Shown here: positions 4,582-24,167 of the stretch, piece by piece
How positions within the stretch are numbered: the first letter of the stretch is position 1
How the letters are laid out: each line of letters opens with the position of its first letter
Virus record (IMG/VR): IMGVR_UViG_3300008110_000030
Location: 1 to 64,000 of that record
Strand: one strand, 5' to 3'
Length of the DNA stretch: 64,000 nt
Program-made: the position numbers and the translations under genes
Notes under the pieces: generated by a model
What the model saw: only the letters and a program-made list of their open reading frames with translations
What the model was told of the DNA's origin: nothing
Databases searched by the model: none

Positions 4582-4588
4582 ATAAAAC

Positions 4589-4663: not shown

Positions 4664-4667
4664 ATAT

Positions 4668-6268: not shown

Positions 6269-6653
6269 ACTCCTTTAAGAAATACATTTTTATATCTGGG
6301 ACAATGCCAATATCTTCATTAAAATTAAAACCCACTGCGTTCAGTATCTTGTTGTATGTATCCTTATCCTGCTCGTAGGGAACATAATATGGATCATTGC
6401 CATGTAGCAAATCAGGATCATTAAGTGATTCATAGAAATCTTCATTAAAATGCTGATTAAGCCAACGAGCATAGCATATGGCAACTACATAACTTTTAGC
6501 AGGGTAAACCCAGCCTAGTTCGTTGGTTGTAAAATACTTGATAGCATTTTCTAAGATATCATCTTTTATTTCAACCGTGTGTAAACTTAAATCATCATCG
6601 TGATCAGTATTAAGCCTGTGAAATATCTCTTGACGTATTTTCCATTCTTTCAT
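6252..6653 (-). CDS. Hypothetical protein in the radical SAM cluster
   Basis: Overlaps both neighbours; PAKSYVVAICYARWL motif. Confidence 0.75.
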   Translation of the reverse strand: MKEWKIRQEIFHRLNTDHDDDLSLHTVEIKDDILENAIKYFTTNELGWVYPAKSYVVAICYARWLNQHFNEDFYESLNDPDLLHGNDPYYVPYEQDKDTYNKILNAVGFNFNEDIGIVPDIKMYFLKEFDLDK

Positions 6654-7551: not shown

Positions 7552-8024
7552 GACAAATACTTTTTTAATTTTTTTAAACGGGACGTAGTTCGTTTAATGA
7601 AGTAACTTCTAACAAGCCAAGAATTATTGAAAGGAAAGGTGAATTGATTAGGATTATATACCCAAATCATAACACATTTATAATCTGTATATTGGCGAAG
7701 AAATAATTTATTAATCTCTTCAATGCCAAAATGATCAAAAGAGTGATCTATAGTTGATATAATTCTTAACTGACTTAGATCAAACATTAACTTTTTAGCT
7801 GAAGTTGATGAGTCCACTACCACAACAACATTGGCAACTGGATATTCACCGTGTGTCCCTTGACAACTGGAAATAGTCAAATATCCCAATTCTAATAATA
7901 CCTGCACTGTCTCTTTGATGCCGTCTTCTATTTCATCATAAAAATTAGCAAAATAAGGACTAACAACGATGTTGACACCATCGTCTATTTTGATTGATCC
8001 ATCACTATGTCGTTTATTGTACAT
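7548..8024 (-). CDS. Hypothetical protein, weak TYW3-like TISSCQG motif
   Basis: IEDGIKETVQVLLELGYLTISSCQG; translationally coupled to neighbours. Confidence 0.65.
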   Translation of the reverse strand: MYNKRHSDGSIKIDDGVNIVVSPYFANFYDEIEDGIKETVQVLLELGYLTISSCQGTHGEYPVANVVVVVDSSTSAKKLMFDLSQLRIISTIDHSFDHFGIEEINKLFLRQYTDYKCVMIWVYNPNQFTFPFNNSWLVRSYFIKRTTSRLKKLKKYLS

Positions 8025-9088: not shown

Positions 9089-9382
9089 TTATTTTGACAA
9101 AGGACTGCCTACTTCTAAATTCCCATCGCCTCGTTCTAAACCATTTATTTGACGTATTACATCCATAATTAGATGTTTATACTTTTGTGTAGGACCTTCA
9201 AGTTCTTTAATTTTGGAATCCCAGTAGTCTCTTTTTTCTGGGATCTCCATATCTCGAACACAATTGTTAGCATACACCAAATATTCTTGACAATATATTT
9301 CACGTTGTGCTTCGTACTTTTCTTTTAAAGAAACAAGCTCTTCTGGACTAAGGGTGTCTAAATCTACTCCATGATCAATCAT
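9089..9382 (-). CDS. Hypothetical coiled-coil protein
   Basis: ORF packed within the operon. Confidence 0.65.
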   Translation of the reverse strand: MIDHGVDLDTLSPEELVSLKEKYEAQREIYCQEYLVYANNCVRDMEIPEKRDYWDSKIKELEGPTQKYKHLIMDVIRQINGLERGDGNLEVGSPLSK

Positions 9383-10995: not shown

Positions 10996-11606
10996 TACGA
11001 GTCTCTTACAGTTTTATCTAATACTATATTGTCGCCTAAATATAAATCAATTGGCATAGCAATACGCAGTCTAGATGTGTACCCTTGGACATGATGAAAA
11101 GTGTAGCTGGGAAATATTAGATAATCTCCTGTGCTTGGCATGTGAATCTCAGTATTAAAAAACTTTTGAAAATGATCATCATAGCCTCTATGACTGTTTC
11201 CTCTAGGATCAGTAAACACTATCTCTCCGCCTTGGGCATTATTCTCTGCCATTAGATAATATACTGATCCAATTTGGGATCCGCTATGGCTGTGAGATAC
11301 CATGCCTAGTCCATCTTTGTAACTGGCAATCCAGCTTCTTAGTCTATAGTTAGGATAGTTTTCAAGTGATGTTTCATACACCTTATTCAAATATTCTTCA
11401 AAGTTAGGTATAACAACTTCTTCCCTAAATTTAGTGATAGTTTTATCACTATCATAAATCATATCAACCCAGCCAAGATCGTTTGGGCCTACGTTCAAAT
11501 CATACGTTGAAATAATTTTATCTGCCAAGTCGTTTATTAACGTAGCATTGTCAACATTGCCTACTTGTATAAATGTAGGCCAACAAATGTTTAGGCCCTT
11601 GTTCAT
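10995..11606 (-). CDS. 2OG-Fe(II) oxygenase (TIGR02466-like)
   Basis: HSHSGSQIGSVYYL...DPR...HHV...R. Confidence 0.8.
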   Translation of the reverse strand: MNKGLNICWPTFIQVGNVDNATLINDLADKIISTYDLNVGPNDLGWVDMIYDSDKTITKFREEVVIPNFEEYLNKVYETSLENYPNYRLRSWIASYKDGLGMVSHSHSGSQIGSVYYLMAENNAQGGEIVFTDPRGNSHRGYDDHFQKFFNTEIHMPSTGDYLIFPSYTFHHVQGYTSRLRIAMPIDLYLGDNIVLDKTVRDS

Positions 11607-13234
11607 TTTATTCTTCCAAATAGTTCATTCATTATGAGCAGTTTGTTACTTGCAACCCATCGTGGAATAGCTTCAGTTCTAACTACCCCATTTATAGTGT
11701 TAATATTTCTAGCTGGGGTGTCTGGATTCAGTATATCTTTTACTTCAGCATATATCTCATCAAAGCCATCTACTGTTTTAAGAATTTCCCAACAGTGTTT
11801 GGCAAACTGTGAAACTGTTACTGAATCTTTAAAAAGATCATACATCTCACGTATCAAATTATTACCTGCAAAATTCATAAAAAACATTTCAGCGACGTCT
11901 TCTCTTGAAAAAGAATAGCTACTAGCAACTGTCTTATAGAATGTTCTACGATTTTTAAATAATCCGCCAGTGTTGGCAATGTCTTGTTCATCTACATTAT
12001 CAGTGTAGACATCGACTAATTCAATAGCATAAATTTCTTGATAAACTGGATCGCTGATCTCACTATCAGGTAATGCCATTAAGTCATACCGCCAACTAGA
12101 CCATGCGCCTAAATCATAAAATAGTTCCCACTCGGCATAAAAATCTTCTAAGGTACTCCCAGGCATGGCCATAATCAGTTCCATGCCTGGATGGTAATCA
12201 TATTTGGCGCACAAGTCACGCATGTACTTGCCTAGTTTAATTTTGTCTGATACTTTCATATCAGTCCGCTTGGCCACTTTCATAGCTTCATCACTAATAC
12301 TTTGTATACTAATGTTAGGAACTATGGCAGCTCTATCTTTTCGTCCAAAAGGCTGTATGATTTCAAAGAAGCTATCAACTAGTCTTTTTCTTCTTTCGTA
12401 ATCTTTTGTTTTAACTTGGCTTATATCAATAAAGGTTAGTCCTGCGTCCTTGGCAAACTTTAGAAGTCCTAAATCACGTTCTTCAAAAACCCCAAAATTA
12501 GCGTCAGCACAGATTGCTTCAGTAAACCCTGCTTCTACAATAGCAACACAATCTCGTTGTGCCCACTCTACTTCTTTTTTAATAATCTTGCCACCAATAC
12601 CACCACCCCACTCACAGTAGGTACAACTAAACGGACAGCCTCTGGTAGTTTCAATAACCATCATCAGTTCCATTTCATTTTCTATACCATAGGCACTGAT
12701 CTTTTTTAGATAGTCTAAATTTTCTTCATACGCACTTGCTAGAGGAAACTCCCAACGCTGTTGTTTAGTAGAGCGCACTTCGTAAGTTATATCACTTGCA
12801 TCAAGTTTATTTTCAATAAACAGATCTAGAACGTCCTTAACAAAGAACTCTCCTGGAAACATAGGACGTAATATATAATCGTACATACTACGTTTGATCC
12901 ACAGTGCAGGATCCTTTGCCCCAATCATTGGACCGCCCAACAAATTTATTACAGACGGGTTCTGTTGTTTAGCGTATTGTGCTATTTGATCAACTAGGTC
13001 ATAATTCCAAACATAACTGCTGAACATTATGATATCAGCATCTTTTATCAGTTCATATATTTCTTCAATGCTTTGGTATTCGTTGTACTTGTAAGGAGGC
13101 TCTAACCACTCTACTTGATCAGAGTATTTTCCATTATGTTGGTAGAAACTCTTGCATAGCATCCATGTGACTGGGTTGATTAAACTCCAGTCGGCATGTG
13201 GCGGATTGATAAACGCTATTTTGATTCTTTTCAT
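11603..13234 (-). CDS. Cobalamin-binding-domain radical SAM protein, paralog of 9379
   Basis: FSSYVWN, LLGGPM, ETTRGCPFSCTYCEWG. Confidence 0.88.
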   Translation of the reverse strand: MKRIKIAFINPPHADWSLINPVTWMLCKSFYQHNGKYSDQVEWLEPPYKYNEYQSIEEIYELIKDADIIMFSSYVWNYDLVDQIAQYAKQQNPSVINLLGGPMIGAKDPALWIKRSMYDYILRPMFPGEFFVKDVLDLFIENKLDASDITYEVRSTKQQRWEFPLASAYEENLDYLKKISAYGIENEMELMMVIETTRGCPFSCTYCEWGGGIGGKIIKKEVEWAQRDCVAIVEAGFTEAICADANFGVFEERDLGLLKFAKDAGLTFIDISQVKTKDYERRKRLVDSFFEIIQPFGRKDRAAIVPNISIQSISDEAMKVAKRTDMKVSDKIKLGKYMRDLCAKYDYHPGMELIMAMPGSTLEDFYAEWELFYDLGAWSSWRYDLMALPDSEISDPVYQEIYAIELVDVYTDNVDEQDIANTGGLFKNRRTFYKTVASSYSFSREDVAEMFFMNFAGNNLIREMYDLFKDSVTVSQFAKHCWEILKTVDGFDEIYAEVKDILNPDTPARNINTINGVVRTEAIPRWVASNKLLIMNELFGRIK

Positions 13235-13244
13235 AGATTACACT

Positions 13245-13273
13245 ATTATACAACATAAAGTTAACAATTACAA
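13245..13273 (-). promoter_or_regulatory. Internal sigma70-like promoter before the B12 radical SAM pair
   Basis: TTGTAA-17 nt-TATAAT with TG in the spacer. Confidence 0.5.
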
Positions 13274-13783
13274 GCCTTCTACATTATAAGTGAAACTGGC
13301 AAGTCTTCTTGTGATTTTGCTTTTACTGGCTCTGTGAAAAAAGCCAGGAGTTTGATTTAACAACATCAAGTCACCCTTTTTAGGATAGTACGTGTCAATA
13401 TTGCCTTCCCCAGGCCACTTAAATTGCACTTCACCTCCAGTTGCAGGATGCTGATCATCAAAGTAAAATAAGAAGAAGATATTACCACCTTCAAATCCAT
13501 CGTTGTGCCAAATACTGCTGTCAGCATCTACGCCTTCAGCAATAACGTAATTCATAAAAGTATTCTTTGGAAATGCCTGATTAATATATTTTTCAGTTAT
13601 ATATACCTTGGCTGCTTCCATTTGCAACATCACTTCTTTAGGTAAGTCGTCTTTAAAATTATCACGTAATCGTTCTTCATGATAGTGGAATTCTACACTA
13701 TCAATATCAATCATGTTGGCTAATTCTTCTTCTCTAAAATAAGCATACCCTTTGGTAAGTAAATCATTTTTCCAATCTAACAT
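13268..13783 (-). CDS. 2OG-Fe(II) oxygenase (prolyl-hydroxylase-like)
   Basis: WHND...GGE...FHRA...R. Confidence 0.75.
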   Translation of the reverse strand: MLDWKNDLLTKGYAYFREEELANMIDIDSVEFHYHEERLRDNFKDDLPKEVMLQMEAAKVYITEKYINQAFPKNTFMNYVIAEGVDADSSIWHNDGFEGGNIFFLFYFDDQHPATGGEVQFKWPGEGNIDTYYPKKGDLMLLNQTPGFFHRASKSKITRRLASFTYNVEGL

Positions 13784-13784
13784 C

Positions 13785-14807
13785 TTATTTCTCCAGTTTC
13801 ATTTGTACGTATTTAAACGACTTCTTAAAAACACATTCATCTAAATCTCTAGTTAATTCTTTATAATCACTGCTAATGAAACAACTGAACCCACATTTTT
13901 GATAAAATTCGCAAGTAAAGCAGTTGCGTTCTTTCATAAAGTTTTGAATAATAACTGTACCCTCTAAATTAGATGTGACGTTATTTTTCATCAACACACT
14001 TCCTGAGCACCCTTTAGGTGAAGTGTTATCGTACATAATAGTAAAACTACTACCACGTGTACAAGCCATCTTGTTATTAGGAGCAGTACCTAAGAATGAT
14101 TCTACGTTCATAGTCTCAGGATACTTATCAATCAATATTTTATAAAATTCGTATAACTCTGATTCTTTTGGCATCATTACTTTAAGAGCATTGTGTCCAG
14201 GTAATAAATGATCCCATGTCATAGTAAAATTATTATACAAATAATCGTGGTAGTCGTCACCCTTTAAAAGATTGGCAATATTTTGTTTAGTGATTACTAA
14301 ACTGATAAGTTTAACATAGGGTTTAAACAGTTCAATATTTTGTTTAAATATTTCAAATTGTACAGGATTAAATCTACCAGCTAGATCATAACTAACGCTC
14401 ATGGTCAAGTCGTATTTTTGACAAAACTGTATGACTTGGTCCATTCTGTCATTAACTAAATTTGTAACAAAGTTAAAAATTAAAACTTTATCCTTAGGAA
14501 CCTTATTGCGAACTTGCTCTATAAATTCGCTGTAATACTCAATGAACCCTTGATCAATTAGCTCGTCTTGAAATAGTTCTCCACCCATAATGTGAAGATG
14601 AAATTCTTTATTTTTGCTATTTGCAATCCAATTACATATTGGATCAACTTTCTTTAGAATTTCCTCTCGACTCAACCCAACACGACTATTGTGATCCTGT
14701 GGACAGAATACACAACTCATGTTACAGTGTTCAAAGAAATTAACCACAATTTCAGACCAGTCAATTACTTTGTCCTTTATTACGCCGTAAAAAAATTCAT
14801 CACTCAT
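13785..14807 (-). CDS. Radical SAM protein with C-terminal Cys cluster
   Basis: CNMSCVFC; MGGELF; CFTCEFYQKCGFSC. Confidence 0.87.
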   Translation of the reverse strand: MSDEFFYGVIKDKVIDWSEIVVNFFEHCNMSCVFCPQDHNSRVGLSREEILKKVDPICNWIANSKNKEFHLHIMGGELFQDELIDQGFIEYYSEFIEQVRNKVPKDKVLIFNFVTNLVNDRMDQVIQFCQKYDLTMSVSYDLAGRFNPVQFEIFKQNIELFKPYVKLISLVITKQNIANLLKGDDYHDYLYNNFTMTWDHLLPGHNALKVMMPKESELYEFYKILIDKYPETMNVESFLGTAPNNKMACTRGSSFTIMYDNTSPKGCSGSVLMKNNVTSNLEGTVIIQNFMKERNCFTCEFYQKCGFSCFISSDYKELTRDLDECVFKKSFKYVQMKLEK

Positions 14808-15946
14808 GCGAACACCATTTGTTTTAATCTAGGATCGTTATTATTTTTTAACTCATAAACAAGTTGAAGAATATAATTGTTCCACTTTTGTACGTGTGTT
14901 AGTATATCAAATACAATACTAACATTGTCTTTTTCAAAATCTTTCTTTAGTATGCTGTTTATTTGTTCAGAAGTCATGTTGTCACGATTTTGGATCAGTG
15001 ATCTTAAGGTATCAAAAACAAAATGAGCATGGTTACTTTCAAAATAGTCTTCATCTAGCAGTCTTATTTTGTCATCGATCTGAATATCCTTGAACCAAAA
15101 TTCTTGTAGAAATTTTCCAAGTTCTAATATTTCGTCAATGTGTGCTAAAAAATAAGCACTATCCCTAGTTATAAATTTTAATTCATTATCAAACATCCAA
15201 TATAACTTTGGATGAGCTCTAAGTTTTTCCCTCCAACAATCGTCGTCCCAAGCGATATCTAATTTAAATGCTTCTTTGACATTTGCTTGCATGAAGTACT
15301 TGATAAAATAAAAGTACCATTCACTGACTTCCATTGCTAGTGCTTTTGACAGGACATAGATATATTTGTCTTTAAACACTTCAATATGACTTTCGTCATT
15401 GAAGAAGTTTGCAAGATGCCATTCAATACTAAAGCCTTCAATATGTTGTTTGACCCATTGTTGACGTACTATGTTATCACTCCACGGAGTTAACTGATTA
15501 AATAGCTCAATGAAATCTTTTTTGTTTAGAAACTCTATATCAAGTATGCTAGTCTTATTAAAATCCATGAAGCTACTGTTTAATACTATAGCAGGGAAAT
15601 GTAATTTTGACCTTTGCACTGATGCATTATAACAACAAAATGCCAAGTTAGCATCCATGTTAGGGAATATTGTCTTGATCCAATTTATAAAGACAATGTT
15701 GAATGCATCCATATCAACATAAAAGTTGAGTTTACTTTCATGTTCTAAACTGCATAGCAGTGAATGCCAATCTTTGTAAGCTCCGTTTACTCCCACTAAA
15801 TCTGTATAAGTCGTTGCTTGGTGCTTAATTGGATTTAGTGTAGACTTTTGCGCAACATTGGGGTTTTTACTAATAATGATTCTTTTTTTAGAATTATTAA
15901 CTAGATAGTCTGGGGAAACATATACCTTATTGAACAGATGTAACAT
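14804..15946 (-). CDS. Orphan protein, MLHLF-family paralog 1
   Basis: N-terminus MLHLFNKVYV shared with 16488 and 17478. Confidence 0.75.
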   Translation of the reverse strand: MLHLFNKVYVSPDYLVNNSKKRIIISKNPNVAQKSTLNPIKHQATTYTDLVGVNGAYKDWHSLLCSLEHESKLNFYVDMDAFNIVFINWIKTIFPNMDANLAFCCYNASVQRSKLHFPAIVLNSSFMDFNKTSILDIEFLNKKDFIELFNQLTPWSDNIVRQQWVKQHIEGFSIEWHLANFFNDESHIEVFKDKYIYVLSKALAMEVSEWYFYFIKYFMQANVKEAFKLDIAWDDDCWREKLRAHPKLYWMFDNELKFITRDSAYFLAHIDEILELGKFLQEFWFKDIQIDDKIRLLDEDYFESNHAHFVFDTLRSLIQNRDNMTSEQINSILKKDFEKDNVSIVFDILTHVQKWNNYILQLVYELKNNNDPRLKQMVFA

Positions 15947-16491
15947 TATGTGATCCTATTATATTGGTCTACATAAGATTCGTAACCATCAGTGTTAATA
16001 TACAGATCAAAAGGAAGACATAGTCTTGTTCCTGGACCTTGGTGTGTCAAAACTTCGTGTCCAAGATAACTTGGAAAAATTAAAAGATCGCCTGGCTCTG
16101 GGTGTATTTCAACTGGACTAAACCAGCTTTGATTAATATTGATCTGTTGTGTGGGCGGATGTAAAACAATCTCGCCTCCAGATGCCGTTTGGAGATAAAA
16201 TATCCCTGACAACCAGCCCCAAGGATGCCAATGCCATCGAGCACTATTGCCTGGTTCAATATACAACATGTTGCCGTTTAATTTTACTTCTGCATTTTTT
16301 GGCAACTCTTCCTTCCAGGTTTCAGAAACAGCACTCATGATTTTCTCATAAAGTTTTTCAGTAAACTCATCAGTGTCTTTGAACCATTTATTTTCATGCT
16401 GGCACACAACATTACTTTGAAACATAAGATTTACTAAATCTTCATTCCCGTGTTCATAGTGTATTTTGGTTGGCCAAATTTCTTTTTTCAT
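15946..16491 (-). CDS. 2OG-Fe(II) oxygenase (TIGR02466-like)
   Basis: WHWHP..LSGIFYL...FPSYLGHEV...R. Confidence 0.8.
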   Translation of the reverse strand: MKKEIWPTKIHYEHGNEDLVNLMFQSNVVCQHENKWFKDTDEFTEKLYEKIMSAVSETWKEELPKNAEVKLNGNMLYIEPGNSARWHWHPWGWLSGIFYLQTASGGEIVLHPPTQQININQSWFSPVEIHPEPGDLLIFPSYLGHEVLTHQGPGTRLCLPFDLYINTDGYESYVDQYNRIT

Positions 16492-17471
16492 TTTCTCAAT
16501 ACGTAATGCTGTAGGCTTACGTTTCCTAAGATAGTATTTACTGATATATCTTGATAGGTTTCTAAAATATGGTCCAAGAAGTAGACATTAAAATATTTTC
16601 TACCAAAATCTGAAAATGATGTTTGTCCAAGATTATGCAAATTGTATTGGATAATCGCATTTAAGTCTTCATCACTAATACTATCTTTTCTAATAATTGG
16701 TATCAAATTTAATTTAGTAACACACGGGTTCTCAGAATTAGAATGCACCCAACTGCCTAAAAAGTTAGAGCAATTTTCTACAAAATTAGATGAAAATTTC
16801 TCGTCATCAAAACATTGCCAGCTGAAAGACCCAGTTTTGAATACTTCAAAAAACCATGCTAGATTTGGATCACATATTAAATTCTCTAAATTTTTATATG
16901 TGTATTTTTTTGTTTTCAACAATTGTTGCAATTTTGTCTTAGCAGAATTAAGTAAAATTGTGTCACGTGTTTCTTCTATAAAGTTTTGCATATCCTTTTT
17001 TACAAGTTTATGCAATACGTTTTTTAATTCTTCTTTAAATGATTGGTTATAAAGATAGGAAGTTAATAAAAATTCAAAACTGATATCTTCTAAAAAATCA
17101 CAAGTATCCAATTTTTCTACACTGTCATATATGATGTTGTAGTCATCTTCTTTTATTACAGTGTCTTTTAATACATCAACACTCTTATCTAAACCAATTA
17201 ATTGATTTTCTTTTAATAGATGACATTTTAGAATCGTATAACATGATTCTGAAGTGGGAAATGCAAAAACTGACTTGTGCCATTGTGCTACAAGTTTAAT
17301 GAACAAAGTTTTGTCAGCAACAATGACAAGTTTTTTGTTATTCTTGATACAATTTAATTTAGCAATTAGTAAAAGTTCAAGCAGATCGATATCTTCAGTT
17401 GCAGTAATACTATTGAAATCTGAAGATGGATATTTAAAATCTATATAAACTTTCTTAAAAAGATGTAGCAT
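16488..17471 (-). CDS. Orphan protein, MLHLF-family paralog 2
   Basis: N-terminus MLHLFKKVYI. Confidence 0.75.
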   Translation of the reverse strand: MLHLFKKVYIDFKYPSSDFNSITATEDIDLLELLLIAKLNCIKNNKKLVIVADKTLFIKLVAQWHKSVFAFPTSESCYTILKCHLLKENQLIGLDKSVDVLKDTVIKEDDYNIIYDSVEKLDTCDFLEDISFEFLLTSYLYNQSFKEELKNVLHKLVKKDMQNFIEETRDTILLNSAKTKLQQLLKTKKYTYKNLENLICDPNLAWFFEVFKTGSFSWQCFDDEKFSSNFVENCSNFLGSWVHSNSENPCVTKLNLIPIIRKDSISDEDLNAIIQYNLHNLGQTSFSDFGRKYFNVYFLDHILETYQDISVNTILGNVSLQHYVLRK

Positions 17472-17477
17472 TGCATG

Positions 17478-18662
17478 TTAAATCGGGAGTACGAATCCAT
17501 TTAACTTATTTTTTTCATCTTTCACTACACATCGGGTAATATAGTTTATTAGTGGCATATTAAATTTAGTGAGATCAATTCCCCCGAATTGACAGGCTGG
17601 ATCAGCGATTGGTCCAGATAGTTGTGTTTGTATTACAAAATCAAGATCACTATCTGTAAATTGATTTGAAATAACAATATCAAACATTCTGAATATATCA
17701 TTTTTCCAAATGGTAGCTCTAGGTCCTAGGTTTTCAATGTCGTCAAATAACCATAAACGTTTCCAATGGAATTCTAAATGAGATTTTAATTTTTGGAACT
17801 GGCTCGCAGTCAATTTTTCAAATTGAAATTCTGAATAAGAAGTGTGTGCAACTGGCACACCTTGAACTCCCCAAAGCGTACTATCAAACCAGATGTCAAA
17901 TGCCGGGTCCAAAGCTATTGTGTCTAGATTACCTAGATCATATGAGCCAGTGGGGGTACACTCTTCGGCCATACTGTTGTTGCTCAATAATTGACGCAAC
18001 ATAAATGCCTTTGCCTCATACACATATTGTTGAGCACCAAACTTCAATGTAGTTTTTAAAATATTTTTAATGATATCTTTATGTGTACCATTGACAAAGT
18101 AGGAAGCTAATAGATATTCAAAACTTATTGTAGGTGTAATTAAAGAAACAAACCCATCATAAACACCAGTTTCAACAACAGTGGAGTTATACTGTGCGTG
18201 AAACTCTTGTGGGCTCACATAGTGTTCAATTTGTGTTTGTCTATACGGGCGTGTGAAACTGTTATTGACACTTTGGGTAATACCAAACATTCTAGTCATG
18301 AACATGGAACTTGACACAAGACCATATGCATCATCTGGTGTGGCATTAGGCAAAATTATTTTGATCCACTTGGATGTCAGTTTTAAGTAAGTGTCTCTGT
18401 CACAATAGATAACAATTCTAGAATTGTAGCTGTCAGCTTTTCGATTGACATCATTTAAAAATAATAAAAAATTAGCATATTTTTTATCTGGACCAATCAA
18501 TTCGTCTAAGTTTCTAGCAAATGCGATAAGATCAGAATGTACCACTCCAGCCAGATCATGTAATAGATCAACACCATTTTCTTGTGAAATCACATACCTA
18601 TTGACGTTTAGATCGATTGAATCGTCTAAATCTAAATAAACTCTTTTAAACAAGTGGAACAC
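17478..18662 (-). CDS. Orphan protein, MLHLF-family paralog 3
   Basis: GTG start at 18662 with AAGGAG RBS gives MFHLFKRVYL. Confidence 0.75.
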   Translation of the reverse strand: MFHLFKRVYLDLDDSIDLNVNRYVISQENGVDLLHDLAGVVHSDLIAFARNLDELIGPDKKYANFLLFLNDVNRKADSYNSRIVIYCDRDTYLKLTSKWIKIILPNATPDDAYGLVSSSMFMTRMFGITQSVNNSFTRPYRQTQIEHYVSPQEFHAQYNSTVVETGVYDGFVSLITPTISFEYLLASYFVNGTHKDIIKNILKTTLKFGAQQYVYEAKAFMLRQLLSNNSMAEECTPTGSYDLGNLDTIALDPAFDIWFDSTLWGVQGVPVAHTSYSEFQFEKLTASQFQKLKSHLEFHWKRLWLFDDIENLGPRATIWKNDIFRMFDIVISNQFTDSDLDFVIQTQLSGPIADPACQFGGIDLTKFNMPLINYITRCVVKDEKNKLNGFVLPI

Positions 18663-19359
18663 TTTGAATCTCCTTGATATCTTTTTCCATTGCTTCAACG
18701 AAGGCGTCAGGATTAAACTGATCTGTAACAATTGCCCAAGTTAGAATGAAAATAGGATTGTTTGGGTTGGCCCAGTAATGGTATAAGTTCTTTCCCTTAA
18801 AAATATAATCGTTAAAATATACTTCGTGATACTTAAAACTATTTTGATCTACAGTGGTGTAGAAATCATAAAAATCATCATATTTCAACAAGGATACAAA
18901 ATTAATTCCAATAACCAAGTTGTTATCAAATTTTGGAGCCTGCTTAATTTGTTCTTTATAATTGTCGTCGTTGATTGAATATGTATTAAAATATAACAGA
19001 CTATCTAATATGCTAGCCCATACATTTAATTGTTCTTTGTTAGCACTAATAAACTCAGTATAACCAAAGTCATTTACTCCCTTATATTGGAGTAACATGC
19101 GAATAGCTTCTTTTTCTAAAAAAGGAATATTAACTAAAAATGGTGAATTTAAATAATCAAGTAATAATCCATCAGCTAATTCAGTATGCGCTTCTAATTT
19201 AATGTCAGATGGAATATCTAAATTACTCAAATAGGTCAGTAACTTCGTTCCTTTTAGATCGCTGTTTGCATAATCAATAAGATAAAACGTGTCCTTATCA
19301 GTAAAGTATTTTTTTAATTCTTCAATTTTAATTGGCGCCGTTGTTTCAATAATTTTCAT
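18646..19359 (-). CDS. Hypothetical protein next to the candidate substrate
   Basis: ATGA overlap with the upstream gene. Confidence 0.75.
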   Translation of the reverse strand: MKIIETTAPIKIEELKKYFTDKDTFYLIDYANSDLKGTKLLTYLSNLDIPSDIKLEAHTELADGLLLDYLNSPFLVNIPFLEKEAIRMLLQYKGVNDFGYTEFISANKEQLNVWASILDSLLYFNTYSINDDNYKEQIKQAPKFDNNLVIGINFVSLLKYDDFYDFYTTVDQNSFKYHEVYFNDYIFKGKNLYHYWANPNNPIFILTWAIVTDQFNPDAFVEAMEKDIKEIQSVPLV

Positions 19360-19961
19360 CTTCTACCTCTTGAGTTATGGCAGTTGCTATGACAACTGAC
19401 ATGACAAACTTCTTTATAATATGTGGTTCCATCATCACCTAAAATGTTGGGTCTAAGGGTTTGATATACTTGGCTCATGCTAAGAATAAAATTGTTTAGA
19501 TTTCCTCTAGAAATAATGCTATTTGCTTGTATGTCAAAATAGTTGTTGATCGTTGTAGGTTGTTCACCGTCAGCAGTAATGGCAATTCTAGTTAGGTCAA
19601 CGTTACTAGCAGTTGACGTATATGGACTTCCTGGGGCAGGTCTATTACCACCGCCACCTGTAACTTTCCTAACACATCGTATATTTCTAATTCTAGTATA
19701 ATACTGAATAATTTGACGAACACCTTCAGTTAGTGAATCAGCTTCAATTCGTTCAAGAGAACCATAACCAGCGTCAACTGATACTGGATCTAAACCTGCC
19801 CAGTCAGTACGATGAGCAAACCAGCCAGTATCTGCTTCAGGAAATGGTTTGATGTTTGTGCCCCAAACAATACCGGTTTTGGCAACACCGTTAATTTGTT
19901 CAATTGTACGTTGTACAAGGGTTAATCGTCTAATTGGTCCTGGATTCTCTAATGCTGGCAT
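19356..19961 (-). CDS. Candidate radical SAM substrate with C-terminal (Cys-His-x-x)3 motif
   Basis: Ends CHVSCHSNCHNSRGRR; directly downstream of a SPASM radical SAM gene. Confidence 0.75.
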   Translation of the reverse strand: MPALENPGPIRRLTLVQRTIEQINGVAKTGIVWGTNIKPFPEADTGWFAHRTDWAGLDPVSVDAGYGSLERIEADSLTEGVRQIIQYYTRIRNIRCVRKVTGGGGNRPAPGSPYTSTASNVDLTRIAITADGEQPTTINNYFDIQANSIISRGNLNNFILSMSQVYQTLRPNILGDDGTTYYKEVCHVSCHSNCHNSRGRR

Positions 19962-19962: not shown

Positions 19963-21018
19963 TTAAATTTCCTTGATTATGAACACTTTGTTGTTCTTTT
20001 TAGTATTTATGTTTTCTAACTCTAGCATCAAACTCTTTGGAGCCCCGCACACTTCCCCTTGCCACTCTAGTTGATGGCAATCTCCACCGCATTTATGAAA
20101 TACTGCACAGTCATAACATCTTGGATCCATGTTGCGTTCACAAGCCATGTTTTCCAATCTGCGCTCGCTAGTTAACAATACAGATAATTCGTCGTTGATA
20201 TGGCCAAACTGTTGCTCAGGAGCACTATTTGGGCATCCAGATATGGTCCCATCAGCGTTTAATGTGAATAATTTTTCTTCGCAATCTCTACAAAAAGTTC
20301 CACCACGAGTAAGATTGTGTTCAAACTTAGAATATACTGTTTCTAAAAACTCATTATTAAACCAAGTTCTGGCATTGTGCTGTTCACTCAAATGGTGCAT
20401 GTTTAAAAACCAAGCATCTTGTTCTTTATTAGTTGGGAATATATCAGGATATAGTCTAGCGTTTCCGTTGTTGGTCAATCGCTCTAAACTCATCTCTTTA
20501 ACACCTAAATCCCTAATCCACTCTAACAAGTCGAACGGATTCATTTTTACTGTTCCACTAGTAACACTTATGAACAGTTTAATTTCAACTCCTAAATCTT
20601 GTAAAGTTTGTAAATTCTTTCGCCATAAGTCATATTGTTTAGGATTGGCAAATCTAATATCTGGATCCCAACTAGTTCCAATTCTATTGCCTAGTGGACC
20701 TTGAATAAATGCAATAATTTCTGGAGTAAGTTTAAAAACTAAATTAGTAGTAACTCCCCAAGTCATATAGGGCCAAATATCTTTACATTGATCGTAAACA
20801 TATTGCATGGTACTTAGGTCAGCTAGAAAAGGTTCTCCACCATGGAATTCACAATGAACGTGTGGACTATCTGGAATTGCTTGTCCAAGCCTACCTAACC
20901 AATCTGCAACCTTGACGTGATCCCAGTAAATCTTTGCTCCGTTGGTTCCGCTAAAACAATGCTTGCAATTTAGGTTGCAAGTTTCTGTTGTTTTAAGGTA
21001 AATGCTTAATTCTTTCAT
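19963..21018 (-). CDS. Radical SAM/SPASM maturase
   Basis: LKTTETCNLNCKHC; FHGGEP; CRDC, GCPN, CYDCAVFHKCGGDC; start moved to ATG 21018 (ATGA overlap). Confidence 0.9.
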   Translation of the reverse strand: MKELSIYLKTTETCNLNCKHCFSGTNGAKIYWDHVKVADWLGRLGQAIPDSPHVHCEFHGGEPFLADLSTMQYVYDQCKDIWPYMTWGVTTNLVFKLTPEIIAFIQGPLGNRIGTSWDPDIRFANPKQYDLWRKNLQTLQDLGVEIKLFISVTSGTVKMNPFDLLEWIRDLGVKEMSLERLTNNGNARLYPDIFPTNKEQDAWFLNMHHLSEQHNARTWFNNEFLETVYSKFEHNLTRGGTFCRDCEEKLFTLNADGTISGCPNSAPEQQFGHINDELSVLLTSERRLENMACERNMDPRCYDCAVFHKCGGDCHQLEWQGEVCGAPKSLMLELENINTKKNNKVFIIKEI

Positions 21019-21473
21019 TGTAACCCAATGCTTATTGCCCACGTGTCCTTTTGATTGAACACACGGTGCTTGTGACCTTTTGGAATAGCCACACTGTCGC
21101 CCGACTTTAAGACGTACGTCTTGTTTTTAATTTGCACTCTTTTATGTCCCCTAATAACATACAGCATTACATTTGTGGTATCATGATGCCAACCAAAACT
21201 ATAATCAGTTTTGGGACTATAAAATAGATGAATATCTTTAATCTTATGTTTACTAAAATACTTTTTAATATGCGGGTTCTTTTCTAACCCTTCAACTTTA
21301 ATAGCAGAGTATTTACTAATACTATCTACATATTGAGAGTATGATAATTTTTGATTGGCATACCAAGACCACATGGTATGACCTGTCCTATCAATAACAA
21401 CGATTTCGTTATTGTCAAAATGCTCAAATGAAATTATTTCTTCTTTGAGCATTTTGTAAAGACTTTTTACCAC
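21015..21473 (-). CDS. JmjC/cupin-like 2OG oxygenase
   Basis: GWHHDTTNV...G.K...L..GD...IPKG..H. Confidence 0.75.
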   Translation of the reverse strand: MVKSLYKMLKEEIISFEHFDNNEIVVIDRTGHTMWSWYANQKLSYSQYVDSISKYSAIKVEGLEKNPHIKKYFSKHKIKDIHLFYSPKTDYSFGWHHDTTNVMLYVIRGHKRVQIKNKTYVLKSGDSVAIPKGHKHRVFNQKDTWAISIGLQ

Positions 21474-22381
21474 TTGATAAAACCTCGACTATACCCTTCA
21501 GGACGATTAACACCATCTTCAAATGCCTGGCGCCATTCTGTATTTCTATCATATCCCTTAGTCCAAAATTGACTAACATCTAAGTCCCCACGCTCAATCC
21601 AACTCACAGCCAGTTTCATACAATTGTGGAATGTTTTAGCACGTGGGCTTGGCATAATGATAGTCACGGCCTTCCAAAGTAAGCTACCAAAGTTTGTTAC
21701 AAGTGCAGGCTTCTTTTCACAAGCCATAATCCAAAGAGCACCTGGAGCAAGTAAATCTTGTTCAATTACTAGATTGTTTTCTCTGATGTCTATAATAACA
21801 TCATACTGTTCATATTGAGGTTTATCAACTAGAACCCCATTGTACTTTTGCCACATGTCTTGATTACTGCTACCAACAACTTCAATACTCGCAAACTCTA
21901 CATGTGTCAAAGATAGTGTATGATAAGCAATCCAAGCAAGAAATCCACTGCCAATAATCAAACAACGACTTTCTGGACCACTACGGTCACACACAGCACG
22001 TAGATCTTGTTCAACTAAATTGATACCGCAAGCAACTGGTTCAATAATGTATTTTGGATCTGCTTCTGGAACACTAACCCATTCATTTATTTTTACATTA
22101 TAAAAGTCTGCATACGCAGGCTCACCACGTGTGGCTATGAAATCGCCTTCTTTGATTCCACCAACGTCTGCACCGACCCTAGTCACTTGACCAAGTCCTT
22201 CATGTCCTTGCATGTGTAATGGCAGTGGTCCAAACTCACCGCGCATCATGGCAATGTCACTACGACAAACGCCGGTCATTACTGCTTTGACTTCAATCTC
22301 GTTTGGTAAAGGTTCGGGCTTCTCCCAAATTTGTTCTTTGAAAGCCCCATTGCTGTCTGTGTAAAGTAGTCTAGTTTTCAA
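21467..22381 (-). CDS. Zn-dependent alcohol dehydrogenase superfamily protein
   Basis: GVCRSD and GHEGLG motifs. Confidence 0.85.
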   Translation of the reverse strand: MKTRLLYTDSNGAFKEQIWEKPEPLPNEIEVKAVMTGVCRSDIAMMRGEFGPLPLHMQGHEGLGQVTRVGADVGGIKEGDFIATRGEPAYADFYNVKINEWVSVPEADPKYIIEPVACGINLVEQDLRAVCDRSGPESRCLIIGSGFLAWIAYHTLSLTHVEFASIEVVGSSNQDMWQKYNGVLVDKPQYEQYDVIIDIRENNLVIEQDLLAPGALWIMACEKKPALVTNFGSLLWKAVTIIMPSPRAKTFHNCMKLAVSWIERGDLDVSQFWTKGYDRNTEWRQAFEDGVNRPEGYSRGFIKW

Positions 22382-23265
22382 AACTTTTCAATCCTTTCAT
22401 GTATCCACATGTCCAATTCATATTGTTTCCCCCAAAAGTCATTATTACCTACATTACTGATAGCAACATCAATCATGTTCTTATATGCTTCTTCTGGGCA
22501 TAAGCCTAATTCAAAACGACGAACAGTTCCGTCTGACATTTCAAATTCTACTGCTCGGTTATCTGCCACACCATCCGCCCAGTTTGCTTCCATTTTCCAA
22601 ATACGACCATTTTGCATGTATTTGATTTTGCAAACGTCATCTACATCATATATACCATCACGTTTAACTACACCATACTCAGTGTCTTCAATTTTATCCA
22701 ATGTGTGTTTTTGTCTTGCTTCATGACCCGTAATAGTAGCAGTTCTCCAATTGTCATTTAGTGCAACATACAGACTAAGCAAGTGTGGCATAAGGTCTCT
22801 GCTGACGCCTCCATAGGATAGTTCTTTAGTTGTGAACCAAGTACCAGGACCTGGGATTCTATTTTTATTAACCCATTTGATTTTCACAGTACGTGCATCT
22901 GCAACACATTTACGCATTTCTTCAATGTTGTCACGGAACATATTGTTCTTGACCATTATGAATCGAGTGTTTGGAAAATCCTCAGTTAAGCACTGCCAGC
23001 ATTTGGCATCTTGCAAACCAGGCTTTTCAATAAAAACAATTTTAGCAACCTTTGCCACTCGCCTTGCTATTTCTTCATGTGTAAAGTTTGGTGTACAGAT
23101 ATGTGCTGTGGCAAATGGGCCATGTGCTAAAAATGCTGATTCAACTGTGGGCAAGTCAGCACGTTTGCCAATATCACTATCTACTGTAACCACATCAATT
23201 TTTAATTCTTCTAGCACTTTCTTATAGAGAGACCCAATTCCCATACCCACCACTAGGCTTTTCAT
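22378..23265 (-). CDS. Gfo/Idh/MocA family oxidoreductase
   Basis: GMGIG Rossmann start, ICTPNFTH, FIEKP. Confidence 0.8.
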   Translation of the reverse strand: MKSLVVGMGIGSLYKKVLEELKIDVVTVDSDIGKRADLPTVESAFLAHGPFATAHICTPNFTHEEIARRVAKVAKIVFIEKPGLQDAKCWQCLTEDFPNTRFIMVKNNMFRDNIEEMRKCVADARTVKIKWVNKNRIPGPGTWFTTKELSYGGVSRDLMPHLLSLYVALNDNWRTATITGHEARQKHTLDKIEDTEYGVVKRDGIYDVDDVCKIKYMQNGRIWKMEANWADGVADNRAVEFEMSDGTVRRFELGLCPEEAYKNMIDVAISNVGNNDFWGKQYELDMWIHERIEKF

Positions 23266-23735
23266 TGTTTATTTTCCTTAGTTAATTCACATACTAGCAT
23301 AAAGTGTTCATATGCTTTACGTACTGCTGGATTACTTAGTAGTATATCTGCTTCTTTCATCATGGCTTTGACTGCTTCTTCTGCGCACTCTCGAGCACTA
23401 GGCCATTCTAGTTGTTTGGCATCAGGACCAAACTCTTCTACAAGTTTATCCCATGCGGCTTTCTGTCCGGGAGTCAAGGGAGTTTCTTTGTTGCGGGTAT
23501 TGCGACGAATCTCAGTAGCATCCATGATGCGCTTAGAAATTATATCTTCTGCAACACGACCTGCGGCAATCATCGGAGCATAAGCCGGATCGATATTAAA
23601 CCTACGGCTACTACCACCAGGATAGCTTTGCACTAAATGAGTACCTTTAGGGAAGCTGTCACAAAACTCACTTGAGTACGTGCTGTGGGGAACGTAACGG
23701 CGACCTTTTTTAATATAAAAAATAATTTCTTTCAT
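23262..23735 (-). CDS. Hypothetical protein
   Basis: ORF coupled to neighbours. Confidence 0.7.
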   Translation of the reverse strand: MKEIIFYIKKGRRYVPHSTYSSEFCDSFPKGTHLVQSYPGGSSRRFNIDPAYAPMIAAGRVAEDIISKRIMDATEIRRNTRNKETPLTPGQKAAWDKLVEEFGPDAKQLEWPSARECAEEAVKAMMKEADILLSNPAVRKAYEHFMLVCELTKENKQ

Positions 23736-24040
23736 AGCAGTCCTGCGGAATCTTCTTTCAGTATCTTTGCATTTTGATTTGGAAATCGTTGTGTGAAAAT
23801 TTTGCTTATCTCTTCTATACTTTCTGCCTGTCCAACGAATTGGTTATCATCTTTTCTATAACAGTATAACACATTACCGTGTTTTTCCAAAGTCAAAAGA
23901 ACTTCTTCTGCTTGTTGCTGTTCTTTAATTTGTTTGACTACTAGATGTGTAATCATTTTGATCATAAGTTTTTGGATGGCCCAAGAAAATAATACCCAAC
24001 ATAGAACTCCTATCCAAAATCCATTCCAAAATTCGTCCAT
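23732..24040 (-). CDS. Hypothetical protein with N-terminal TM helix
   Basis: GGAG RBS before ATG 24040. Confidence 0.7.
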   Translation of the reverse strand: MDEFWNGFWIGVLCWVLFSWAIQKLMIKMITHLVVKQIKEQQQAEEVLLTLEKHGNVLYCYRKDDNQFVGQAESIEEISKIFTQRFPNQNAKILKEDSAGLL

Positions 24041-24067
24041 AAACACTCCAAATTGTTCAGTATCGCT

Positions 24068-24096
24068 ATTATAATATAGTAGACAACTTGTGTCAA
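24068..24096 (-). promoter_or_regulatory. sigma70 promoter (leftward)
   Basis: TTGACA-17 nt-TATAAT. Confidence 0.85.
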
Positions 24097-24138
24097 TCAT
24101 ATAAAAATATTTAACCAAACTGATTTTACCAAAAGGCA

Positions 24139-24167
24139 TTGACAAATGGTTGATATTACCTTATACT
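24139..24167 (+). promoter_or_regulatory. sigma70 promoter (rightward, divergent)
   Basis: TTGACA-17 nt-TATACT. Confidence 0.8.

What the first reader, a model, noticed from the sequence alone, without database searches (positions are those of the whole stretch)
19356..19961. Candidate substrate: 201 aa protein ending CHVSCHSNCHNSRGRR
Seen: three 4-residue C-H-x-x repeats and a basic tail on an otherwise almost Cys-free body, encoded 1 nt after a SPASM radical SAM gene. Known: His-Xaa-Ser repeat (Hxs) and Cys-rich ranthipeptide precursors lie beside SPASM maturases that form crosslinks. Inference: a full-size, perhaps virion-associated, carrier whose tail is crosslinked, methylated or hydroxylated by the cluster and possibly released by cleavage.
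Basis: partly seen in the sequence, partly recalled or inferred. Interest (0 to 1): 0.8.

Follow-up and report, generated by a model that had tools for sequence, protein, structure and literature searches.

The report
Phage virion protein with enzyme-matured tail
A jumbo phage encodes a probable virion protein whose last 16 residues, (Cys-His-x-Ser)x3-Arg-Gly-Arg-Arg, are essentially invariant across hundreds of phage lineages and always sit among radical SAM enzyme genes, which points to an undescribed enzymatic maturation of a phage structural protein.

Summary
ORF 19356-19961 (-) encodes 201 aa ending CHVSCHSNCHNSRGRR and starts 1 nt after a genuine SPASM radical SAM (rSAM) gene.

The tail is a family signature, not chance:
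- 669 clusters at 50% identity belong to the family, and 171 of 182 fetched members end in CH..CH..CH..R.RR, always with three repeats.
- Codons vary synonymously, so selection acts on the peptide.
- The body has drifted to about 30% identity.
- The family is essentially phage-only.
- Every locus with enough flank carries rSAM genes beside the tail gene.

The core cassette is cupin, SPASM rSAM, tail protein, phrog_20767, three more rSAMs and 2OG oxygenases. It usually follows tail-fibre genes.

The homologue Atu_ph07 gp170 was detected in purified virions, peaking in the top gel band despite a mass of 31.9 kDa. The cassette enzymes were not detected.

Best reading: a virion structural protein whose flexible tail is the shared substrate of a multi-rSAM cassette and stays attached. 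The chemistry is unknown. No protease or exporter was recognised and no known family cut-off is met. The closest characterised analogue is bacterial HxsA (HxS repeats, rSAM-matured). I found no prior description.

The parts
19356..19961 (-). Tail-bearing protein, 201 aa. It has a fast-evolving folded body of about 185 aa plus an invariant 16-residue C-terminal tail.
   Evidence: It matches no Pfam, NCBIfam or PHROG family.
19356..19406 (-). Codons for the tail CHVSCHSNCHNSRGRR plus the stop codon.
   Evidence: C, H and R are invariant. The fourth position of each repeat is Ser, occasionally Asn. Codons vary synonymously.
19963..21018 (-). SPASM radical SAM enzyme, 351 aa, with no N-terminal peptide-recognition domain. 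Its layout resembles the anaerobic sulfatase maturase.
   Evidence: It is 42-49% identical to cultured jumbo-phage homologues and is present in 56 of 56 full loci.
21015..21473 (-). Cupin / JmjC_2-type putative protein hydroxylase. Its stop overlaps the start of the SPASM gene.
   Evidence: Cupin_2 42.8 bits, JmjC_2 38.2 bits, both above cut-off. Present in 54 of 56 loci.
18646..19359 (-). phrog_20767 protein of unknown function. Its start overlaps the tail gene's stop as ATGA.
   Evidence: AF2 pLDDT is 88 with no PDB fold match. Present in 56 of 56 loci.
14804..18662 (-). Three paralogous proteins of unknown function: par3 at 17478-18662, par2 at 16488-17471 and par1 at 14804-15946. A 2OG-Fe(II) oxygenase (15946-16491) lies between par2 and par1.
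   Evidence: At least one 'par' protein occurs in 47 of 56 loci.
13785..14807 (-). Second radical SAM enzyme (rSAM2).
   Evidence: The best, still weak, NCBIfam hits are HxsB and HxsC. Present in 56 of 56 loci.
9379..13783 (-). Accessory block: a weak 2OG-like protein (13268-13783; PF13640 at 20.3 bits, below the 27-bit cut-off), a B12-binding rSAM methyltransferase (11603-13234), a 2OG oxygenase (10995-11606) and a second B12-binding rSAM (9379-10995).
   Evidence: B12-binding enzymes occur in only 23 of 56 loci.
8014..9087 (-). Third radical SAM enzyme (u357), SPASM/twitch-like.
   Evidence: Median 67% identity across loci; present in 54 of 56.
5675..8024 (-). An unknown 158-aa protein (7548-8024), a short radical SAM enzyme u313 (6610-7551), an unknown 133-aa protein (6252-6653) and a 2OG-Fe(II) oxygenase (5675-6268).
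   Evidence: u313 in 55 of 56 loci, u133 in 49 of 56.
21467..24145 (-). Head of the operon, specific to this clade: an ADH_N dehydrogenase (21467-22381), a GFO/IDH/MocA oxidoreductase (22378-23265) and two unknown proteins. A 12-of-12 sigma-70-like promoter lies at 24096-24068.
   Evidence: ADH and GFO occur in only 3 of 56 loci.

Best explanation
The 201-aa protein is the substrate of a phage-specific maturation cassette built around several radical SAM enzymes.

Its folded, rapidly evolving body is a virion structural protein, probably associated with the tail-fibre or baseplate module. Its flexible 16-residue C-terminus, (C-H-x-S/N)x3-R-G/S-R-R, is the part the enzymes recognise and modify.

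Shown:
- The tail is conserved at the peptide level.
- It co-occurs strictly with the enzyme set.
- The genes are translationally coupled.
- A homologue is present in virions while the enzymes were not detected there.

Inferred:
- The SPASM enzyme encoded 1 nt upstream abstracts hydrogen atoms in the three repeat units and installs Cys-based cross-links. One small thioether ring per CHx(S/N) unit is my preferred guess.
- The other radical SAM enzymes, the JmjC-type cupin and the 2OG oxygenases add further marks, such as Arg or His hydroxylation. Clades with B12-binding enzymes may add C-methylation.
- The product is not cut off. It stays on the protein and is built into the particle, where it contributes to an SDS-resistant high-mass assembly, possibly one that binds metal or DNA.
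For: Conservation of the tail:
- 171 of 182 family members end in the exact tail, always with three repeats. Bodies average 0.53 Cys.
- The family comprises 669 clusters at 50% identity.
- Among 71 distinct tail DNA sequences, Ser switches between AGY and TCN codons and Arg between AGA and CGN.
- Median identity to the window's proteins: body 32%, SPASM 61%, u357 67%, u313 60%.

Linkage to radical SAM genes:
- All 82 tail ORFs in loci L001-L081 (found via a peptide pattern from the tail, then confirmed by tblastn to the whole protein) lie in a locus with cassette radical SAM genes.
- A search using the tail DNA pattern alone gave 118 tail ORFs. All that have enough flank sit next to CxxxCxxC proteins.
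- SPASM, phrog_20767 and rSAM2 occur in 56 of 56 full loci.

Phage specificity:
- Only 2 hits were found among 185,579 species genomes. Both are MAG contigs; one was checked and has the cassette-like gene layout.

Virion evidence:
- Atu_ph07 gp170 carries the tail and shares the C-terminal 72 residues by hhalign (98.4% probability).
- Its calculated mass of 31.89 kDa matches the published table.
- Table S5 of PMC6102473 lists it in virions with 8 peptides and 35% coverage, in bands 1-9, peaking in band 1. gp165-169 and gp171-172 are not listed.

Context:
- Tail-fibre genes lie directly upstream in many loci.
- One family member is fused to a Gly_rich_2 domain.
- The SPASM enzyme aligns collinearly with the anaerobic sulfatase maturase, which acts on whole proteins, and it has no N-terminal recognition domain.
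Against: - No modification has been observed anywhere. Everything rests on comparative genomics and one proteomics table.
- The gel loading buffer as described lists no reductant, so plain disulfides or ordinary fibre-type SDS-resistant oligomers could explain the band-1 migration.
- An invariant Cys/His array could simply be a metal site.
- The virion evidence comes from a homologue that is alignable only over the C-terminal 72 residues, plus a weak whole-fold match (Foldseek E 2.3e-4).
- In the window itself the cassette does not follow fibre genes, and it sits behind a perfect sigma-70-like promoter, which is not typical of late structural genes.
- The tail has no Asp or Glu acceptor like those used by the best-scoring maturase model, PapB.
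Confidence: 0.55

Rival explanations
1. The tail is an unmodified metal-binding or oligomerisation motif. Three Cys and three His per chain would hold Zn or Fe, much as the His-lined metal sites in phage fibre and spike tips do. The neighbouring radical SAM enzymes and oxygenases would then act on a different substrate, such as the fibre protein encoded upstream or a small molecule.
For: - The position is in the virion and next to fibre genes.
- Tail-fibre proteins in the same table also run above their mass (gp288, gp327 and gp472 in band 2).
- Cys and His are the invariant residues.
- From my own knowledge, T4 gp37 and P2-type spikes bind Fe through His repeats. This was not tested here.
Against: - The Ser/Asn position and the R-G-R-R end are as constrained as Cys and His, which a metal site alone does not explain.
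- The tail gene is embedded inside the enzyme operon with overlapping or 1-nt junctions.
- The enzymes never occur without it in the 15 cultured-phage records.
- No other conserved candidate substrate exists in the cassette.
Confidence: 0.2
2. This is a true RiPP or cofactor pathway. The body would act as an oversized leader, and the modified tail would be cut off and released as a peptide or small molecule, as for PQQ or mycofactocin.
For: - The cassette holds many redox enzymes: radical SAM, 2OG, cupin, and in this clade ADH and GFO oxidoreductases.
- The core-like sequence is C-terminal.
Against: - No peptidase or transporter family was found in any cassette ORF.
- The homologue's body is a well-covered virion protein.
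- The body is a folded domain conserved in the family.
- ADH and GFO occur in only 3 of 56 loci.
Confidence: 0.07
3. The protein is not a substrate. It would be an accessory factor for the enzymes, for example an Fe-S or metal donor or a scaffold that uses its Cys/His tail.
For: - The tail is rich in Cys and His.
- The cassette contains four to seven Fe-S enzymes.
Against: - It is found in virions while the enzymes were not detected there.
- It lies in the fibre module, and one member is fused to a glycine-rich domain (PF21722 Gly_rich_2), which I recall, without testing, occurs in phage fibre proteins.
- Its body evolves far faster than the enzymes it would have to dock with.
Confidence: 0.08

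Closest known systems
Bacterial HXS antiphage system: HxsA with His-Xaa-Ser repeats, matured by radical SAM enzymes HxsB and HxsC with HxsD (PMC13128918, Nat Commun 2026)
   Same: - A full-size protein, not a short peptide, carries tandem H-x-S units in a basic context.
- It is matured by more than one radical SAM enzyme encoded beside it.
- In HxsA the reported +8 Da change maps to SHRSS in the last repeat, and every repeat is essential.
- The phage tail contains three H-x-S/N units followed by RGRR.
- The best NCBIfam hits of the window's rSAM2 are HxsB and HxsC, though they are weak.
   Different: - The repeats here have period 4 with an invariant Cys. They number three rather than five, and they sit at the extreme C-terminus.
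- No Pfam family, and so no peptidoglycan-binding domain, was detected. A signal peptide was not tested.
- No HxsA or HxsD model is hit.
- Enzyme scores of 24-28 bits are far below the cut-offs of 268-370.
- The protein is phage-encoded and, in a homologue, virion-borne, rather than a bacterial periplasmic defence effector.
- The cassette has four to seven radical SAM enzymes plus cupin and 2OG oxygenases.
Ranthipeptide / SCIFF-type RiPPs (PapB, CteB): SPASM radical SAM enzymes that form Cys thioether rings in repeated Cys motifs
   Same: - A C-terminal, repeated Cys motif lies directly beside a SPASM radical SAM gene.
- PapB is the best-scoring NCBIfam model for the window enzyme (E 1.3e-13).
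- CteB is among the closest solved structures.
   Different: - The score of 50.9 bits is far below the 340-bit cut-off.
- The window enzyme has no N-terminal recognition domain: its CxxxCxxC motif starts at residue 14 and aligns to CteB residue 101 onward.
- There is no Asp or Glu acceptor in the tail.
- The 'leader' is a folded 185-aa virion protein.
- No protease or exporter was recognised.
Protein-modifying SPASM enzymes: anaerobic sulfatase maturase (Cys/Ser to formylglycine in C/S-x-P/A-x-R) and QhpD (thioethers in the QhpC subunit)
   Same: - The enzyme is about 350 aa with no recognition domain, and it aligns collinearly with anSME over residues 12-334.
- The substrate is a whole protein that keeps its modification.
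- The last repeat, C-H-x-S-R, has Arg four residues after Cys, as in the sulfatase motif.
   Different: - The scores are 39.7 against a 349-bit cut-off (anSME) and 18.3 against 453 (QhpD).
- There is no Pro or Ala at position +2.
- The substrate has no sulfatase or QhpC domain.
- The residue after the aligned auxiliary-cluster Cys is Pro where, as I recall, anSME has its proposed catalytic Asp277 (the residue's role is from memory).

Membership tests
SPASM-domain radical SAM enzyme (the neighbour at 19963-21018) | CxxxCxxC radical SAM motif | tested here: met
   CNLNCKHC at residues 14-21. It is invariant in alignment A3.
SPASM-domain radical SAM enzyme (the neighbour at 19963-21018) | SPASM domain model above its cut-off, with the seven-Cys motif | tested here: met
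   TIGR04085 scores 30.7 bits against a cut-off of 27. Cx10Gx4C, Cx2Cx5Cx3C and a final C are all invariant.
HXS system (HxsA/B/C/D) | Effector matches the HxsA family model | tested here: not met
   The 201-aa protein has no NCBIfam hit at E <= 0.01.
HXS system (HxsA/B/C/D) | Two radical SAM enzymes that reach the HxsB and HxsC equivalog cut-offs | tested here: not met
   HxsB 24.5-24.8 bits against 370; HxsC 21.8-28 bits against 267.9. Only the N-terminal radical SAM core matches.
HXS system (HxsA/B/C/D) | Small partner protein HxsD | tested here: not met
   The small cassette proteins at 6252-6653 and 7548-8024 have no NCBIfam hit.
HXS system (HxsA/B/C/D) | Tandem His-Xaa-Ser repeats in a basic context | tested here: inconclusive
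   There are three H-x-S/N units followed by RGRR, but the period is 4 with an invariant Cys, and there are three repeats, not five.
HXS system (HxsA/B/C/D) | Signal peptide and peptidoglycan-binding domain on the effector | tested here: inconclusive
   No Pfam family, and so no peptidoglycan-binding domain, was found. No signal-peptide predictor was run. A homologue is in virions rather than the periplasm.
Ranthipeptide / SCIFF RiPP | Maturase reaches the family cut-off (PapB or the SCIFF maturase) | tested here: not met
   PapB 50.9 bits against 340; TIGR03974 18.5 bits against 425.
Ranthipeptide / SCIFF RiPP | Short precursor made of a leader and a Cys-rich core, with a recognition (RRE) domain on the maturase | tested here: not met
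   The precursor is 201 aa with a predicted folded body (pLDDT 71). The maturase's radical SAM core starts at about residue 9 and aligns to CteB residues 101-215.
Ranthipeptide / SCIFF RiPP | Cys-rich C-terminal motif directly beside the SPASM gene | tested here: met
   1-nt spacing in the window. The SPASM gene is directly upstream in at least 69 of 82 tail ORFs.
Ranthipeptide / SCIFF RiPP | Thioether cross-links actually present | not testable with these tools
   This needs mass spectrometry of the mature protein.
Anaerobic sulfatase maturase / sulfatase pair | Enzyme reaches the TIGR03942 cut-off | tested here: not met
   39.7 bits against 349.45. The alignment to 4K36/4K37 is collinear but scores only 34 bits.
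Anaerobic sulfatase maturase / sulfatase pair | Substrate motif C/S-x-P/A-x-R within a sulfatase domain | tested here: not met
   The last repeat is C-H-(G/S/N)-S-R. Position +2 is almost never Pro or Ala, and there is no sulfatase domain.
Phage virion structural protein | Detected in purified particles | tested here: inconclusive
   Shown only for the homologue Atu_ph07 gp170. Not shown for the window's own phage.

The most novel reading that the evidence does not exclude
The matured (CHxS)3-RGRR tail would be a functional element of the infection apparatus: a cross-linked, basic, metal- or DNA-contacting tip carried on the virion and acting at adsorption or DNA entry. It would be the phage-side counterpart of the bacterial HXS defence effector, either as a relative by convergence or exchange, or as a countermeasure to it. 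If so, radical-SAM-matured His-x-Ser arrays would be used on both sides of the fight over DNA entry. The known hosts of the cultured carriers are all Pseudomonadota, the phylum that holds 99.7% of HXS systems.
Probability: 0.12. Interest if true: 0.92.

Novelty: new variant of a known kind. Interest (0 to 1): 0.8.

Why it matters
If the tail is modified as proposed, several things follow:
- It would be, as far as I could find, the first virion structural protein matured by radical SAM chemistry.
- It would define a large enzyme and substrate family confined to phages, with 669 sequence clusters.
- The family's members include several orphan proteins: phrog_20767 and the tail protein body have no PDB fold match, and the 'par' paralogues have no family or Atlas match.
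- It would explain the puzzling blocks of radical SAM, cupin and 2OG genes noted without explanation in jumbo phages of Ralstonia, Burkholderia, Agrobacterium, Sinorhizobium and Pseudomonas.

Enzymologists would gain a fixed 16-residue substrate with four to seven candidate enzymes to assign.

Cultured phages with published virion preparations make the question directly testable.

The parallel with the newly described HXS defence raises the possibility that similar chemistry is used by both phage and host.

Tried and rejected
Searches that gave nothing informative:
- Fold search of the tail protein model against PDB: no match below E 3.
- BFVD returned only uncharacterised family members.
- The ESM Atlas gave no informative neighbours for the tail protein, phrog_20767 or par3.
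- phrog_20767 folds confidently (pLDDT 88) but has no PDB fold match.
- Single-sequence PDB search with the SPASM enzyme found nothing. A six-sequence profile was needed.
- PADLOC gave only generic viperin-core matches, so the cassette is not a catalogued defence system.
- Seven literature searches found only annotation-level mentions of these genes.

Hypotheses tested and dropped:
- Tail variable positions against presence of B12 enzymes, 'par' or u133: no clear association, and the sequences are related to one another, so the idea was dropped.
- The body as a copy of the upstream fibre's C-terminal domain: no similarity.
- The window's 'par' proteins as degenerate radical SAM enzymes: no similarity to RSF1 ORF074.
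- tblastn with a type B small tail protein and its 367-aa neighbour: no cultured phage hit.
- The ΦRP12/ΦRP31 radical SAM cluster: these phages did not appear in the tblastn searches with the window's SPASM or phrog_20767, and the cluster was not examined directly. The many radical SAM genes of Campylobacter phage CP220 likewise gave no hit and were not examined.

I rebuilt it without that row.
Full report
**1.

The minus-strand ORF at 19356-19961 encodes 201 aa ending CHVSCHSNCHNSRGRR. The body has one Cys and one His.

The ORF starts one base after the TAA of the upstream gene. Its TGA overlaps the ATG of the next gene as ATGA, and the cupin gene's stop overlaps the SPASM gene's start in the same way (read directly). 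This part of the operon is therefore tightly packed and probably translationally coupled.

The upstream gene (19963-21018; the ATG start agrees with its homologues) is a genuine SPASM radical SAM enzyme:
- It has the CNLNCKHC motif.
- It has the full Cx10Gx4C / Cx2Cx5Cx3C / C set.
- TIGR04085 scores above its cut-off.

A DNA pattern for the tail plus stop occurs once in the window and never in 100 shuffles.

**2. The tail is the signature of a large, unnamed, phage-only family**

The window is 100% identical to part of a 214.6-kb IMG/VR contig, that is, a jumbo phage.

A word-indexed search found 33 relatives. A profile search of 1.84 billion cluster representatives found 669 at E <= 1e-3 and 81 at E <= 1e-30.

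Among the 182 fetched proteins:
- 171 end in exactly CH..CH..CH..R.RR.
- There are always three repeats.
- The 11 exceptions are truncations or small insertions.
- Bodies average 0.53 Cys in 187 residues.

In the tail, C, H and the three Arg never vary. The fourth position of each repeat is Ser, less often Asn. The residue before the first Cys is Val or Ile.

The profile includes the tail, so there is some circularity. However, 16 of 190 profile positions cannot produce scores of 100-280 bits.

Among 71 distinct tail DNA sequences, Cys and His codons split about evenly. Ser moves between the AGY and TCN codon families, and Arg between AGA and CGN. Selection therefore acts on the peptide, not on DNA or RNA.

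The body matches no Pfam, NCBIfam or PHROG family and no PDB fold.

Across one genome for each of 185,579 bacterial and archaeal species there were only two relatives. Both are on MAG contigs, and the one I examined has the cassette-like gene layout.

**3. The refuting test was run and not met**

In 80 IMG/VR loci plus a cultured phage, every tail ORF lies in a locus with cassette radical SAM genes.

The conserved order, which I call type A, is:
- cupin
- SPASM rSAM
- tail protein
- phrog_20767
- 'par' protein
- rSAM2
- (B12 rSAM, in some loci)
- rSAM u357
- (2OG, in some loci)
- rSAM u313
- u133
- 2OG

Presence among the 56 loci with full flanks:

| Component | Loci (of 56) |
|---|---|
| SPASM | 56 |
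| phrog_20767 | 56 |
| rSAM2 | 56 |
| u313 | 55 |
| cupin | 54 |
| u357 | 54 |
| at least one 2OG | 52 |
| u133 | 49 |
| 'par' | 47 |
| B12 rSAM | 23 |
| ADH / GFO | 3 |

A second scan used only the tail's DNA pattern with no body requirement.

That scan revealed a second layout, type B. Two tandem small tail proteins of about 126 and 127 aa are followed by a 400-aa CxxxCxxC protein, two unknown proteins, and three to five more CxxxCxxC proteins.

No locus with adequate flank lacks such a neighbour. Some contigs join type B to the type A enzymes (L129, L153, L172).

**4. The pattern of divergence fits an enzyme and substrate pair in which the tail is what matters**

Median identity to the window's proteins:

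| Protein | Median identity |
|---|---|
| u357 | 67% |
| SPASM | 61% |
| u313 | 60% |
| phrog_20767 | 47% |
| rSAM2 | 34% |
| cupin | 34% |
| tail protein body | 32% |

Only 56 of 79 bodies could be aligned over most of their length.

Among 50,697 cultured phage records, exactly the same 15 records (12 phages) carry both SPASM and phrog_20767:
- Atu_ph07
- Phosso
- RSL2
- RSF1
- RsoM3USA
- FLC6 and FLC8
- FLC4-4C, FLC4-5C and FLC4-11C
- S13
- pPa_SNUABM_DT01

In the three I read, the gene after SPASM ends in the tail, although tblastn with the window's body finds only one of them at 26% identity. The published genome papers list these genes only as annotations.

**5. The protein is probably structural**

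Atu_ph07 gp170 (296 aa) ends FCHSSCHASCHNSRSRR.
- It aligns to the family profile over its last 72 residues, well beyond the tail (hhalign 98.4% probability, E 4e-15).
- It is a weak whole-fold match.
- Its calculated mass of 31.89 kDa, and those of gp176 and gp177, match Table S5 of Attai et al. 2018 exactly, so the gene numbering is the same.

That table lists gp170 among virion proteins with 8 unique peptides and 35% coverage, found in gel bands 1-9 and most abundant in band 1. None of gp165-169 or gp171-172 is listed.

Other proteins of about 30 kDa in the table peak in bands 7-8. Of the proteins under 40 kDa, only gp170 is well supported in band 1.

One caveat applies. The loading buffer as described contains no reductant, and fibre proteins in the same table also run high. 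Disulfides or ordinary SDS-resistant oligomers therefore remain possible explanations.

Gene context agrees with a structural role:
- In type A loci the ORF just upstream is repeatedly a fibre-like protein with a phrog_22593 / phrog_19602 C-terminal domain, preceded by a giant phrog_358 protein.
- Type B pairs directly follow collagen-like fibre genes that carry the same C-terminal domain.
- pPa_SNUABM_DT01 has the central spike gene a few genes upstream.
- One family member is fused to a Gly_rich_2 domain.

The window is an exception. Here the cassette starts behind a 12-of-12 sigma-70-like promoter and four clade-specific genes.

**6. How it most likely works**

The AF2 model (pLDDT 71) shows an alpha/beta body whose last strand leads into a low-confidence tail, which I take to be flexible.

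The SPASM enzyme has no N-terminal recognition domain. It aligns end to end only with the anaerobic sulfatase maturase, an enzyme that acts on whole proteins at Cys or Ser. Its best family models are peptide cross-linkers (PapB, DarE, DynA), all far below their cut-offs.

Three identical C-H-x-(S/N) units suggest one enzyme acting repeatedly. Tolerance of Asn in place of Ser argues that the hydroxyl group itself is not required at that position. I read this as the position being a carbon-centred acceptor or a purely structural residue.

The cupin passes the cut-off for JmjC_2. To my knowledge that family includes ribosomal-protein Arg and His hydroxylases, so the Arg-rich end or the His residues are plausible targets.

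These chemical assignments are inference. The comparative evidence points only to a tail that is selected as a peptide and co-inherited with the enzymes.

No protease or transporter family was found in any cassette ORF, so I expect the mark to stay on the protein.

**7. Comparison with known systems**

The closest characterised system is the bacterial HXS defence (PMC13128918):
- HxsA carries five basic His-x-Ser repeats.
- It needs radical SAM enzymes HxsB and HxsC together with HxsD.
- It acquires a +8 Da change on SHRSS in the last repeat.
- It binds DNA and blocks phage DNA entry.

The phage system works like this in outline, with a full-size protein, H-x-S units, several radical SAM enzymes and a basic context. 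It fails every membership test I could run. It is likewise not a ranthipeptide system, a sulfatase maturase pair or a QhpCD pair by score or by motif.

I therefore file it as a new variant of the kind 'repeat-bearing protein matured by adjacent radical SAM enzymes'. What is new:
- the phage origin
- the link to the virion
- the size of the enzyme set
- the tail itself

I found no paper describing it.

**8. Limits**

- There is no biochemical evidence of any modification.
- The virion evidence comes from one distant homologue.
- The functions of phrog_20767, 'par', u133 and u158 remain unknown.

Noticed in passing
window 206-4743 (-), and 55819-55893, 58799-59030 (+): An array of 20 tRNA genes lies directly downstream of the cassette, behind two 11-of-12 sigma-70-like promoters at 5647-5619 and 5550-5522. 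Three more tRNA genes lie elsewhere.
   Followed up: no
L086 2523-8514; also L111, L139, L151, L171, L173 and others: A second cassette type (type B): two tandem small tail proteins (about 126 and 127 aa) sit right after collagen-like tail-fibre genes. They are followed by up to six or seven CxxxCxxC proteins and two unknown proteins (367 and 278 aa). No cultured phage has it.
   Followed up: partly
L082 9770-10873 (Ralstonia phage RSF1 ORF074): This ORF is annotated as hypothetical but carries CxxxCxxC and is homologous to a type B radical SAM protein (E 2e-14). RSF1-type phages therefore have one more radical SAM gene than is annotated.
   Followed up: partly
window 14804-15946, 16488-17471, 17478-18662 (-): Three paralogous ORFs all begin M-(L/F)-H-L-F-(N/K)-(K/R)-V-Y. 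They match no family and have no informative Atlas neighbour. The third probably starts at a GTG 23 codons inside the listed ORF.
   Followed up: partly
window 18646-19359 (-): The phrog_20767 protein folds with high confidence (pLDDT 88, pTM 0.82) into a fold with no PDB match below E 0.7. It may be a new fold, and it is strictly linked to the tail protein.
   Followed up: yes
window 24068-24096 (-) and 24139-24167 (+): A perfect TTGACA-17-TATAAT promoter lies at the head of the cassette, inside the listed start of the first ORF. A divergent 11-of-12 promoter serves the plus-strand genes.
   Followed up: no
L077 9350-10054; L136, L155, L159; protein P0062: Variants of the tail protein. One has a partly duplicated tail (...HSSCHSSCHSN-VPV-CHSSCHSNCHSNRGRR). 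Some loci have two tandem large copies (about 250 aa each). One copy is fused behind a Gly_rich_2 domain.
   Followed up: partly
L084 (Bacteriovoracia MAG) and L085 (Rickettsiales MAG MED606): The only 'cellular' hits. L085 (32.5-kb contig) carries a phrog_358 giant protein and an ORF layout like the cassette, so it is probably phage DNA binned into a MAG. L084 (3.6-kb contig) was not examined.
   Followed up: partly
window 25190-26146, 26186-26728, 33598-34617 (+): The flanking genes include a class I SAM methyltransferase, a SleB-type cell wall hydrolase and an IMPDH/GMP reductase-family protein.
   Followed up: no
literature: Campylobacter phages CP220 and CPt10: These phages carry 11-12 radical SAM genes of unknown role (PMC2853527). 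They did not appear in tblastn searches with the window's SPASM or phrog_20767 proteins. I did not check whether they encode a tail-like substrate.
   Followed up: no
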